Below are positions 41,307 to 43,657 of a stretch of 64,000 bases of DNA, piece by piece (the first letter of the stretch is position 1; every line of letters begins with the position of its first letter). Source of the stretch: Salpingoeca rosetta (Eukaryota; Protista; Choanoflagellata); the NCBI GenBank assembly GCA_033442325.1, contig JAWQFM010000004.1:2111844-2175843 (forward strand). Reading direction: 5' to 3'. The position numbers were made by a program, and so were the translations under genes. The notes below the pieces were generated by a model that saw only the letters and a program-made list of their open reading frames with translations, made no database searches and was not told where the DNA came from.

Positions 41307-43141
41307 GACAGACAGACAGACAGACAGACACACACACACACACACAAACGCACACGCTGTTTTTACCTGATGGTCAGAAAGGATGGCAATGATAGTGTTG
41401 TGTCCTGCTTCATGAGCCAAATCCAATGCGGTTTTGCCGCTGGCCTGCATTGCTCGTGGTTCCAGGGCATGCGTTTTCGTTAGCACGGGTGGAAGAAGGC
41501 AGCGCGATGAAACACGCAAAACAGAGAAGCAGTCCTCTAGAGTCCTTGAGAAAGCAGCTGCAGGAGCGCACCACGTCCGTCATGGTTGCATCGGCGCCTG
41601 AGTGGAGAAGCAAACGGACGACATCGGGGCGGTTGCCCGCACTTGCAGCGTGCAATGGGGTTCGCCTCTGTGAAGCAAGCGAGTACAGGTGAATAAGAAT
41701 GGCTGATTGAAGGATGGATTAAACGTGGGGACAAGGCTGTCATGGTGATGACAGCGACTTCAGATTGAAGAGAATCGACAAGCAGTCACACAAGTGATAG
41801 GCGCAGGACATATGTACATTGTATGTTGGCTGGTTGACGTCGGCTCCCCTTTCAACAAGGGATCGTGCAACCACCTCGTGGCCGTTGGAGCTGGCAACGT
41901 ACAGCGGTGTCCATCCCTGACAAGTCAAGCCATCCAAAAAGCCAAAAGCAATGTGCAGCAACATATGAAGCGCTTTGTGCAGCAAAACGGGCACAAACAA
42001 CGTGCTGTTGCAGCAATCACCACAGCCAGAAGACAAAACAGCACGTTCATCCTTTCGCAAGCAACCTTCTCACACAAGCACCATAACAACAGAACAATGG
42101 CACGACAAGCACGGGCATAACCTGCCTGCAGTCGTGGAATACACTGGAATAGACATCAACACGACATCGTACATTATTTGTGGCGAGATTCATATCTGCT
42201 CCTTGCTCAAGAAAAAACTGCACGAGCTCCTCGTGACCATTCTGACTCGCGGCGTACAGCGGTGTCTGCCTCTGTTGCCCCAAGCGCACCCACACATGCG
42301 TGCACATCATCGATCAGACACGGCGACAAAGCACTCACAGAGCCCAGCGGCAACGAATACGAAAAAATTCATAGCAGCCAAGAGCCAGGGATTTGAGAGA
42401 GCAGTGCACAGTCTCAATTAGAGACTACTAGCACAGCAAGCACGATAAATGACACCCGAATGTGTGGAGGCAGCATCAGAAGAGACAACAATGTACACTA
42501 CATTGTTCGTTGCTTGATTAATCTCTGCTCCCGCCTGAACAAGAAAGCGCGCCAGGGCGTCGTGGCTTTCCTCGCTCGCAACGTACAGCGGTGTCCATCC
42601 CTAGAGGCGGACAGAACCCAAAGGTACACGCATGCACAGAGAGAAGGAGGCAAGCAGACAGGCAGCCAGACGATCAGAGCATGTGTGTGAGTGTGCAATT
42701 AGGCACGAATGTACAGTCCTTCCTAACGTAAATACCGCCACAGAGCGACCCACAAGACGCATTCCGACGCAGTACTTTCGGACGTCGTTGCGCAACCCCC
42801 CCCCCCCTTGCTGGACGCAAGCAGACCTCCTCCTCAAAGAGCATCAAACTAATGGCAAACGCGACAGAGCTCGAGCAACAGCAACACCATTGTCACCGAC
42901 GCTGCACGGGACGGCGTCGTTGTCTCCAACAAGATACATGACATACATTGTTCGCTGCCTGGTTGATGTTCGCCCCTTTATCAACCAGAAACCGCGCAAC
43001 TGCCTCATGGCCTTCCTGGCTCGCAATGTACAGGGGCGTTGCATGCTGAAAGAGATGCAGAATGTGAAATCAAGAAGCCAACTCACTTTTGAGAGCCAGA
43101 TGGGGACTGAGTGCACCGGCGTTCAACTGTTTCCTACCCCA

Positions 43142-43189
<48 letters not shown>

Positions 43190-43228
43190 GCATACTAGAC
43201 ATACACGCACGCATACTAGACATACACA

Positions 43229-43260
<32 letters not shown>

Positions 43261-43657
43261 GCACACACAATGAGATACCATGCCGTGTTGTCGATGGATG
43301 TTGGCGCCCTGCTGCACCAGGAACTTCACAACATCGACGTGCCCGTGTCGGCTTGCACGATGGAGCGGCAAGTCCCCCTGCTCAAGACGCACGCCGGCAA
43401 TGTGCCGTTGTTCGATAGCGCACGTGAGTTGTGATGTGATCGCAAAGTTTGCCGTAGCCTCGTTGCCTCAACACCCTTGGTTCGGTCCTGCTCGTCCAGC
43501 TTCCTAGTCCAGCAAGAAAGCGCACCATTTTGTCCGACGCATCCCGCTCCTTGTTGATATCCGGCTTTGCGCCCCCTTTTGCTGGATCACCCTCCAACAG
43601 CAACCGCTTCACACGGTCCAGATCTCCCTTCTCGCAAGCCTCAATGAGCGCACTCAT
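37062..43657 (-). CDS. Roco protein: ankyrin repeats + Roc GTPase + COR + TIR + C-terminal SAM-like domain
   Basis: About 8 ankyrin repeats (TPLYxAS..GH). Roc motifs G1 [15 protein letters not shown]3 VVDLGGQ and G4-like IIGTFAD. COR segment [13 protein letters not shown]...VILSPQW. TIR segment YDVFISYR|...[14 protein letters not shown]...[11 protein letters not shown]-like tail [10 protein letters not shown]...[12 protein letters not shown]. Confidence 0.9.

What the first reader, a model, noticed from the sequence alone, without database searches (positions are those of the whole stretch)
41367..43657. One ankyrin repeat per exon: five consecutive 99-nt phase-0 cassette exons
Seen on the minus strand: exons 43377-43279, 43045-42947, 42600-42502, 42271-42173 and 41916-41818 are each exactly 99 nt (33 aa) and phase 0-0, followed by a 96-nt exon at 41667-41572. 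Four of them end in an AAT codon followed by a GTA donor, and two start with the same GGATGGACACCGCTGTACGTTGC. Any of them can be skipped, duplicated or swapped without frameshift. Established: one-repeat-per-exon LRR Roco genes in brown algae have been proposed to diversify by exon shuffling. Inference: a modular, diversifiable ligand-binding surface.
Basis: partly seen in the sequence, partly recalled or inferred. Interest (0 to 1): 0.8.

Follow-up and report, generated by a model that had tools for sequence, protein, structure and literature searches.

The report
One ankyrin repeat per exon array
A gene of a single-celled relative of animals (probably Salpingoeca rosetta) encodes each ankyrin repeat of its sensor arm on its own 99-base in-frame exon, a known design that lets repeat arrays grow by exon duplication; sister genes show such duplication recently, this gene only long ago.

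Summary
On the minus strand, five 99-nt and one 96-nt phase-0 exons each encode exactly one ankyrin repeat. They sit between an N-cap exon and a C-cap exon.

They form the front of an intact 13-exon gene (43657-37062, 1434 aa) reading ANK(8)-Roc-COR-TIR-SAM-like. It is one of at least 33 paralogs in this 55-Mb genome, probably Salpingoeca rosetta.

The same 99-nt AG|..|GT exon occurs once in 16 sampled paralogs. It forms arrays of 3, at least 4, 6, 7 and 28 exons at other loci.

Sister arrays show exon-plus-intron units repeated in tandem: C28 at 82-86% identity, and a four-exon block in C13 at 96.6%. So the arrays grow by duplicating whole units.

In this gene the duplicates are old. Synonymous divergence is 0.8 to saturated, dN/dS is 0.2-0.45, and no intron similarity remains.

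Three RNA-seq runs gave no reads on these exons. Splicing of this copy and any cassette use are therefore untested.

The design is known from brown-algal LRR-ROCO genes. The scan had already reported this family, and its one-LRR-per-exon arrays, on other DNA (s1-432458, s1-435945, s1-435939).

Verdict: a real, moderately interesting new member of a known kind.

The parts
43526..43657 (-). Exon 1, 132 nt: start codon and N-terminal capping ankyrin repeat
   Evidence: Homologous first exons beginning with ATG occur at C28 (82% aa), C26 (71%), C36 (69%) and C13 (56%). No LRR-type exons in 4.8 kb upstream.
43279..43377 (-). Exon 2, 99 nt, phase 0-0: ankyrin repeat 2
   Evidence: PF00023 E 2.6e-9; AG/GT borders.
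42947..43045 (-). Exon 3, 99 nt, phase 0-0: ankyrin repeat 3 (TPLY subtype)
   Evidence: PF00023 E 8.5e-8. Nearest relative is C8 repeat 4, 74% nt.
42502..42600 (-). Exon 4, 99 nt, phase 0-0: ankyrin repeat 4
   Evidence: PF00023 E 9.5e-7. 69-71% nt identity to exons 3 and 6.
42173..42271 (-). Exon 5, 99 nt, phase 0-0: ankyrin repeat 5
   Evidence: PF00023 E 1.5e-8.
41818..41916 (-). Exon 6, 99 nt, phase 0-0: ankyrin repeat 6
   Evidence: PF00023 E 1.7e-8. 77% nt identity to C8 repeats 4 and 5 in ungapped comparison; dS 0.65 to C8 repeat 5.
41572..41667 (-). Exon 7, 96 nt, phase 0-0: last full ankyrin repeat, counterpart of the single repeat exon of most paralogs
   Evidence: PF00023 E 1.9e-8. 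70% nt identity to the last C8 repeat. At C8 and C13 there is no GT after codon 33 and codon 33 is Val (GTN), so a 96-nt exon is inferred there too.
41367..41444 (-). Exon 8, 78 nt, phase 0-0: C-terminal capping ankyrin repeat
   Evidence: A similar capping exon follows the C13 array and the paralogs' repeat exon. Assigned by sequence pattern, not scored with Pfam.
41073..41153 (-). Exon 9, 81 nt: linker
40724..40969 (-). Exon 10: start of the Roc GTPase (P-loop)
   Evidence: PF08477 E 7e-8. 92% nt identity to C8, with flanking introns 82-87% identical.
40033..40538 (-). Exon 11: Roc insert and DxxG motif
   Evidence: RNA reads from paralogs are spliced at the same donor position (loose ends at 40026-40036).
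38260..39834 (-). Exon 12: rest of Roc, COR-A and COR-B
   Evidence: PF16095 E 8e-18; PF25497 E 6e-4, below its cut-off.
37062..38160 (-). Exon 13: TIR domain, low-complexity linker, SAM-like tail, stop codon at 37064-37062
   Evidence: PF13676 E 1.2e-6; SAM_2 only E 0.06.

Best explanation
Exons 2-7 are unit exons, each holding one ankyrin repeat in frame. With the capping exons 1 and 8 they build an eight-repeat ankyrin solenoid. This is the N-terminal sensor or partner-binding arm of an ANK-Roc-COR-TIR-SAM-like ROCO protein. The 99-nt phase-0 exon is ancestral to the whole paralog family of this genome. Arrays lengthen or shorten when an exon-plus-intron unit of about 330-450 nt is duplicated or lost by unequal recombination, which never breaks the frame. 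In this gene the expansion to six internal repeats is old and kept by purifying selection. Sister loci show the same process recently. The role of the arm (ligand recognition or autoinhibition upstream of a GTPase switch and a TIR output) is inferred from domain order, not shown.
For: Exon borders, phases and one Pfam Ank match per exon. The same 99-nt AG|..|GT exon in 17 of 17 paralogs that have the repeat, three of them in L003. Arrays of the same design: C8 with 6 exons, C28 with 7, C36 with at least 4, C13 with 28. Whole units including introns repeated in tandem: C28 82-86% over 1.7 kb, C8 76-82%, and a 1265-nt four-exon block in C13 at 96.6%. Internal exons of this gene group with one another and with C8 repeats, not with the paralogs' single exon. 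Within-gene pairs have dS 0.77 to saturated and dN/dS 0.19-0.45; the COR exon against paralogs has dN/dS 0.25-0.27. The frame is intact across 13 exons with GT..AG throughout. Variable columns match the canonical ankyrin binding positions.
Against: No RNA read covers any ankyrin exon in about 46 million sampled reads from three runs, and other putative RNA runs hold almost none of the stretch. The junctions of this copy therefore rest on sequence and paralog conservation alone. No intron similarity remains between this gene's own units, so unit duplication here is inferred by analogy with C28, C8 and C13. One-to-one orthology between this gene's repeats and those of C8 is blurred. No binding partner or function is known for any family member.
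Confidence: 0.72

Rival explanations
1. The 99-nt exons are true cassette exons: alternative splicing skips or combines them to make several receptor isoforms from one gene.
For: All eight exons of the ankyrin arm are phase 0-0, so any skip keeps the frame. Alternative splicing of repeat exons is reported for brown-algal ROCO genes (PMC11378527, title and abstract).
Against: No reads and no joints over the ankyrin exons in three RNA-seq runs, so there is no positive evidence. Skipping a repeat in a solenoid is tolerated structurally, but nothing suggests regulation. Donor and acceptor sites look ordinary.
Confidence: 0.08
2. The layout is a frozen inheritance with no present role in diversification: an old exon structure carried along, and the array of this gene is simply a fixed eight-repeat domain.
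For: Duplicates in this gene are old, under purifying selection and without intron similarity. The same design occurs at loci with no Roc-COR match nearby.
Against: Sister loci show recent unit duplications and differing copy numbers, so the design is still used by the family even if not at this locus.
Confidence: 0.2
3. The gene is a silent relic or young pseudogene, and its exon pattern has no consequence.
For: Zero RNA depth on exons 1-10 in three runs; putative RNA assemblies hold about 1% or less of the words.
Against: The 1434-codon frame is open through 13 exons with canonical splice sites. The COR exon has dN/dS about 0.25 against four paralogs. One paralog, C26, does look broken (COR match split across two frames; no GT donor at the repeat end), which shows what decay looks like in this family.
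Confidence: 0.1
4. The introns were gained independently at the same register of a formerly uninterrupted ankyrin array.
For: Many ankyrin genes of this genome carry several repeats in one open frame, so uninterrupted arrays exist.
Against: Identical borders in 17 paralogs and in four other arrays. Intron sequence is duplicated together with the exon in C28, C8 and C13.
Confidence: 0.02

Closest known systems
Brown-algal LRR-ROCO genes (Ectocarpus and relatives; Zambounis et al. 2012; PMC11378527)
   Same: A ROCO GTPase with an N-terminal repeat arm. Each repeat sits on its own equal-length exon with symmetric phase. The gene family is large, exon duplication or shuffling is proposed, and the genes are read as candidate immune receptors.
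   Different: There the repeat is an LRR on 72-bp phase-2 exons, and the paper describes the brown-algal architecture as simple LRR-ROCO. Here it is an ankyrin repeat on 99-nt phase-0 exons with a TIR and SAM-like tail. The lineage is a choanoflagellate, not a stramenopile. Alternative splicing is reported there and untested here.
One-LRR-per-exon arrays of the same family in this genome (scan notes s1-435939, s1-432458)
   Same: Same paralog family and same principle of unit exons. I found the ribonuclease-inhibitor-type LRR motif upstream of 12 of 20 sampled paralogs, and one 84-nt AG|..|GT exon carrying it in L017.
   Different: This gene has no such LRR exons in 4.8 kb upstream and starts directly with the ankyrin N-cap. 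It uses an expanded ankyrin arm instead of LRR plus a short ankyrin module.
Vertebrate ankyrin genes (ANK1, ANK2, ANK3) with 24 repeats mostly on 99-bp or 198-bp exons
   Same: One 33-residue ankyrin repeat per 99-base exon is the classical layout there. This is from my own memory of Gallagher et al. 1997 (J Biol Chem); four literature searches here found no text to cite.
   Different: Those are cytoskeletal adaptors, not ROCO/TIR proteins. I did not compare the intron register.
LRRK2 and other ROCO proteins with N-terminal ankyrin repeats
   Same: Ankyrin repeats N-terminal to Roc-COR. [quoted passage not shown]
   Different: No kinase or WD40 here; the C-terminal output is TIR plus a SAM-like tail. 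TPR-ROCO-TIR is listed for the red alga Chondrus in the same paper.

Membership tests
Ankyrin repeat (Pfam PF00023) | A 33-residue helix-turn-helix-hairpin repeat that matches the family profile above its cut-off | tested here: met
   Six exons score 29-37 bits each against a cut-off of 21.1.
ROCO proteins | A Roc GTPase followed directly by a COR domain in one polypeptide | tested here: met
   Roc 33 bits (cut-off 27) on exon 10. COR-A 65 bits (cut-off 35) on exon 12. COR-B 20 bits, below its cut-off of 27. P-loop and DxxG motifs read.
One-repeat-per-exon diversifying arrays (brown-algal ROCO type) | Each repeat on its own exon of constant length | tested here: met
   Five exons of 99 nt and one of 96 nt.
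One-repeat-per-exon diversifying arrays (brown-algal ROCO type) | Symmetric intron phase, so that gain or loss of an exon keeps the frame | tested here: met
   All are phase 0-0. The brown-algal LRR exons are phase 2.
One-repeat-per-exon diversifying arrays (brown-algal ROCO type) | Copy number differs among paralogs, with traces of exon duplication | tested here: met
   Copy numbers 1, 3, >=4, 6, 7 and 28. Tandem exon-plus-intron units in C28, C8 and C13. In this gene itself the duplicates are old.
One-repeat-per-exon diversifying arrays (brown-algal ROCO type) | Exchange of exons between paralogs (shuffling proper), seen as exon trees that disagree with the gene tree | tested here: inconclusive
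   The pattern is mosaic. Against C8, exon 10 is 89% aa identical and introns 9-10 are 82-87% identical, but the COR exon is only 70%. Against other paralogs, exon 10 is 51-60% and COR 72-78%. The COR sequences of C8, C28 and C36 could not be fetched, so no formal test was run.
One-repeat-per-exon diversifying arrays (brown-algal ROCO type) | Alternative splicing of the repeat exons | tested here: inconclusive
   Zero read depth over the ankyrin exons in three RNA-seq runs.
TIR-domain proteins | A TIR fold that matches the profile | tested here: met
   TIR_2 scores 29.4 bits against a cut-off of 28. Catalytic competence was not examined here.

The most novel reading that the evidence does not exclude
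The ankyrin module (N-cap exon, n unit exons, C-cap exon) is a mobile cassette that recombination moves and resizes between loci. Candidate loci are the ROCO-TIR paralogs and the 28-exon C13 array. Cells may also draw on it by regulated exon skipping when the silent genes are switched on. That would give the closest relatives of animals a combinatorial receptor repertoire.
Probability: 0.08. Interest if true: 0.8.

Novelty: new member of a known kind. Interest (0 to 1): 0.45.

Why it matters
It shows how a large family of candidate immune-type receptors in a close relative of animals can vary the length of its sensor arm. Whole exon-plus-intron units are copied in frame, as was proposed for brown-algal ROCO genes. 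The family uses two interchangeable sensor arms, LRR on 84-nt exons and ankyrin on 99-nt exons, in front of the same Roc-COR-TIR core. This gives concrete loci (C28, C36, C13) where recent duplications can be dated and compared between strains. It also gives an old, constrained array in this window as a contrast.

Tried and rejected
RNA support:
- The look-up of sequencing runs and read laying gave no reads on the ankyrin exons.
- The few reads at 40000-40500 come from paralogs: they fit only in part, and a fixed A>G difference at 40056 marks them as another copy.
Three GT-repeat tracts were skipped by the tool.

Introns and the shared 23-mer:
- A search for intron similarity inside this gene found none.
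- The 23-base identity between exons 4 and 6 is not a clear gene-conversion tract. By my own reading of the exon sequences printed, 7 of 8 shared codons are identical in the tract, against 6 of 12 in the rest of the exon.

Upstream exons:
- A tblastx comparison of the 6 kb upstream of the gene with the paralogs' upstream regions returned only low-complexity CA/GT matches.
- A first strict LRR pattern scan found nothing. A looser scan and a motif scan did find LRR exons in paralogs.

Sequence access:
- C8, C28 and C36 therefore lack COR sequence, and no whole-gene tree or recombination test was made.

Literature:
- Searches for a citable statement on 99-bp ankyrin exons failed.
- A chromatin paper on this species says nothing on this family.

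Not done: the large protein searches and structure prediction were not run, because Pfam already names every domain.

Full report
**The observation.**
- Reading the minus strand and translating the stated segments confirms the claim. There are five exons of exactly 99 nt and one of 96 nt.
- All six are phase 0-0, preceded by AG and followed by GT.
- Exons 3-6 end in AAT followed by a GTA donor. Exons 4 and 6 open with the same 23 bases.
- Each exon on its own matches Pfam Ank (PF00023) from about model position 2 to positions 31-33, at E 1e-6 to 3e-9. Exon borders therefore coincide with repeat borders.
- Six of the eight intron lengths from intron 1 to intron 8 (148, 233, 346, 230, 256, 150, 127, 213 nt) are not multiples of three. 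The frame exists only after splicing.
- Six introns in the same register of a 33-codon unit is about (1/99)^5 by chance (my own estimate).

**The gene.**
- The exons belong to a 13-exon gene from the ATG at 43657 to the stop at 37064-37062. All introns are GT..AG, and the product is 1434 aa.
- Pfam gives Roc on exon 10, COR-A and a weak COR-B on exon 12, TIR_2 on exon 13, and a faint SAM_2 signal at the tail.
- Exon 1 is an N-terminal capping repeat and exon 8 a C-terminal cap, so the arm has eight repeats.
- The ATG-bearing first exon is conserved at four other loci, at 56-82% aa identity. No LRR exon lies in the 4.8 kb upstream. The ATG at 43657 is therefore the likely start.
- The genome is 55.4 Mb in 68 contigs. 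Earlier scan notes name it Salpingoeca rosetta.

**RNA.**
- Three raw RNA-seq runs, about 46 million reads sampled, gave zero depth over exons 1-10.
- Reads laid at 40000-40500 fit only in part. They carry a fixed difference from the window and run on into other sequence, so they come from expressed paralogs.
- Their loose ends read across the same exon 11/12 junction. This supports that intron position for the family.
- For this copy, neither the junctions nor any exon skipping can be tested with these data.

**The family.**
- The COR exon finds at least 33 full-length relatives in the same genome, at 53-78% aa identity. Many lie 17-80 kb from contig ends.
- I fetched 20 of them.
- Seventeen of the 20 carry an ankyrin repeat just upstream of the Roc exons. 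In all 17 that repeat is an exact 99-nt AG|..|GT phase-0 exon.
- Sixteen carry it once. L003 carries three.
- Twelve of the 20 also carry ribonuclease-inhibitor-type LRR motifs further upstream, and L017 has one on an 84-nt exon. This agrees with scan note s1-435939.
- This gene is therefore the variant that lacks the LRR arm and has a long ankyrin arm instead.

**Other arrays of the same design.** A profile of exons 3-6 (A2) finds 96 matches in the genome, mostly in short open frames. The loci returned, merged and scanned, show:
- six unit exons upstream of the C8 paralog;
- seven upstream of the C28 paralog;
- at least four at C36;
- 28 at C13:806678-817009, which has the same N-cap and C-cap exons but no COR match nearby.

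Nearly all are exactly 99 nt between AG and GT. The last full repeat appears to be 96 nt in this gene, in C8 and in C13. About 12 further hits lie at C11:272064-277372. By contrast, many Ank_2 matches elsewhere span two or three repeats within long open frames, for example six matches in one 1980-aa frame on C17. The design is common for this ankyrin subtype but not universal in the genome.

**How the arrays grow.**
- In C28 the whole exon-plus-intron unit (period 382-412 nt) is repeated in tandem at 82-86% identity over 1.7 kb.
- In C8, units including about 170 nt of intron are 76-82% identical.
- In C13 a 1265-nt block of four exons with their introns is duplicated at 96.6%.
- C28 repeats reach 95-98% nt identity to each other and have dS 0-0.09.
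- These are direct traces of unit duplication.

**This gene's own array is old.**
- Its internal exons are 61-71% identical at the DNA level, and no intron similarity remains.
- Pairs have dS 0.77 to saturated and dN/dS 0.19-0.45.
- Exon 6 is 77% nt identical to C8 repeats 4 and 5 (dS 0.65 to repeat 5), and exon 7 is closest to C8 repeat 6 at 70%. Part of the expansion therefore seems to predate the split from C8.
- Variable columns (2, 6, 7, 10, 11, 29, 31) overlap the positions that carry binding specificity in designed ankyrin proteins (p 0.005). This is typical of ankyrin repeats and is not evidence of positive selection.

**Mosaic similarity.**

| Compared with this gene | Exon 10 (aa identity) | Introns 9 and 10 (nt identity) | COR exon (aa identity) |
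|---|---|---|---|
| C8 | 89% | 82% and 87% | 70% |
| Other sampled paralogs | 51-60% | not compared | 72-78% |

- The ankyrin exons of this gene and C8 are 77-83% identical at the DNA level, with no intron alignment.
- L018 also aligns with this gene through intron sequence around exon 11.
- This points to gene conversion or recombination among paralogs.
- I could not fetch the COR part of C8, C28 or C36. 'Shuffling' in the strict sense remains unproven.

**Comparison with what is known.**
- Brown-algal ROCO genes carry one LRR per 72-bp phase-2 exon and are argued to diversify by exon shuffling and alternative splicing (PMC11378527).
- The same paper lists ANK-ROCO and TPR-ROCO-TIR architectures in other lineages.
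- One ankyrin repeat per 99-bp exon is, from my memory, the layout of vertebrate ANK1-3. I could not find a text to cite.
- A 2026 preprint reports that a TIR domain from S. rosetta makes cADPR in bacteria. Its figure legend lists Roc and COR among the architectures. I cannot tell whether that protein belongs to this family.
- The scan had already described the family and its LRR unit exons on other DNA.

**Verdict.**
- The evolutionary part of the interpretation (a modular arm that changes length by in-frame exon units) is supported at family level.
- The splicing part is untested.
- This particular array is old and constrained.
- It is a new member of a known kind.

Noticed in passing
G000:C13:806678-817009 (+), loci L029-L032, L035, L037, L039-L041, L044, L046, L048, L049: A run of 28 ankyrin unit exons (26 exactly 99 nt between AG and GT). 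It has the same N-cap and C-cap exons as this gene but no Roc-COR match nearby. It contains a 1265-nt four-exon block duplicated at 96.6% identity.
   Followed up: partly
G000:C11:272064-277372 (-): About 12 further matches to the same ankyrin exon profile in short open frames, about 80 kb from the ROCO paralog at C11:191568. This is probably another unit-exon array.
   Followed up: no
G000 contig ends: Many Roc-COR paralogs lie 17-80 kb from contig ends, for example C26:19170, C30:19693, C14:1677265 of 1694720 and C26:1047483 of 1067092. This suggests a chromosome-end family. The copy in this window is about 368 kb from its contig end.
   Followed up: partly
window 40724-41153 versus G000:C8 (merged loci L025-L027, L033, L047): A patch of high similarity to the C8 paralog runs through introns 9 and 10 (82-87% identity), while the COR exon is only 70% aa identical. 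This is a possible gene-conversion tract.
   Followed up: partly
window 36620-36695 and 35862-35937, minus strand: Two tRNA-Lys(CTT) genes lie just downstream of the gene's stop codon.
   Followed up: yes
window 43132-43274, 41236-41360, 40620-40730, and upstream of 43660: Long GT/CA microsatellites sit in introns 2, 8 and 10 and in the 5' flank. The read tool skipped these tracts.
   Followed up: no
G000:C26:198914-200795 (-), locus L028: This paralog looks broken. Its COR match is split across two frames, and its single internal ankyrin exon lacks a GT donor at the expected place.
   Followed up: partly
L003 (G000:C6:1099680-1109679), oriented positions 2304-2780: An open frame with a small-GTPase NKxD-like motif lies directly upstream of that paralog's first ankyrin repeat. 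It could be a fused extra GTPase part or a neighbouring gene.
   Followed up: no
L014 (G000:C32:758965-768964): The upstream half of this paralog locus reads N (withheld or a gap). The 3129-aa open frame reported for it is therefore not meaningful.
   Followed up: no
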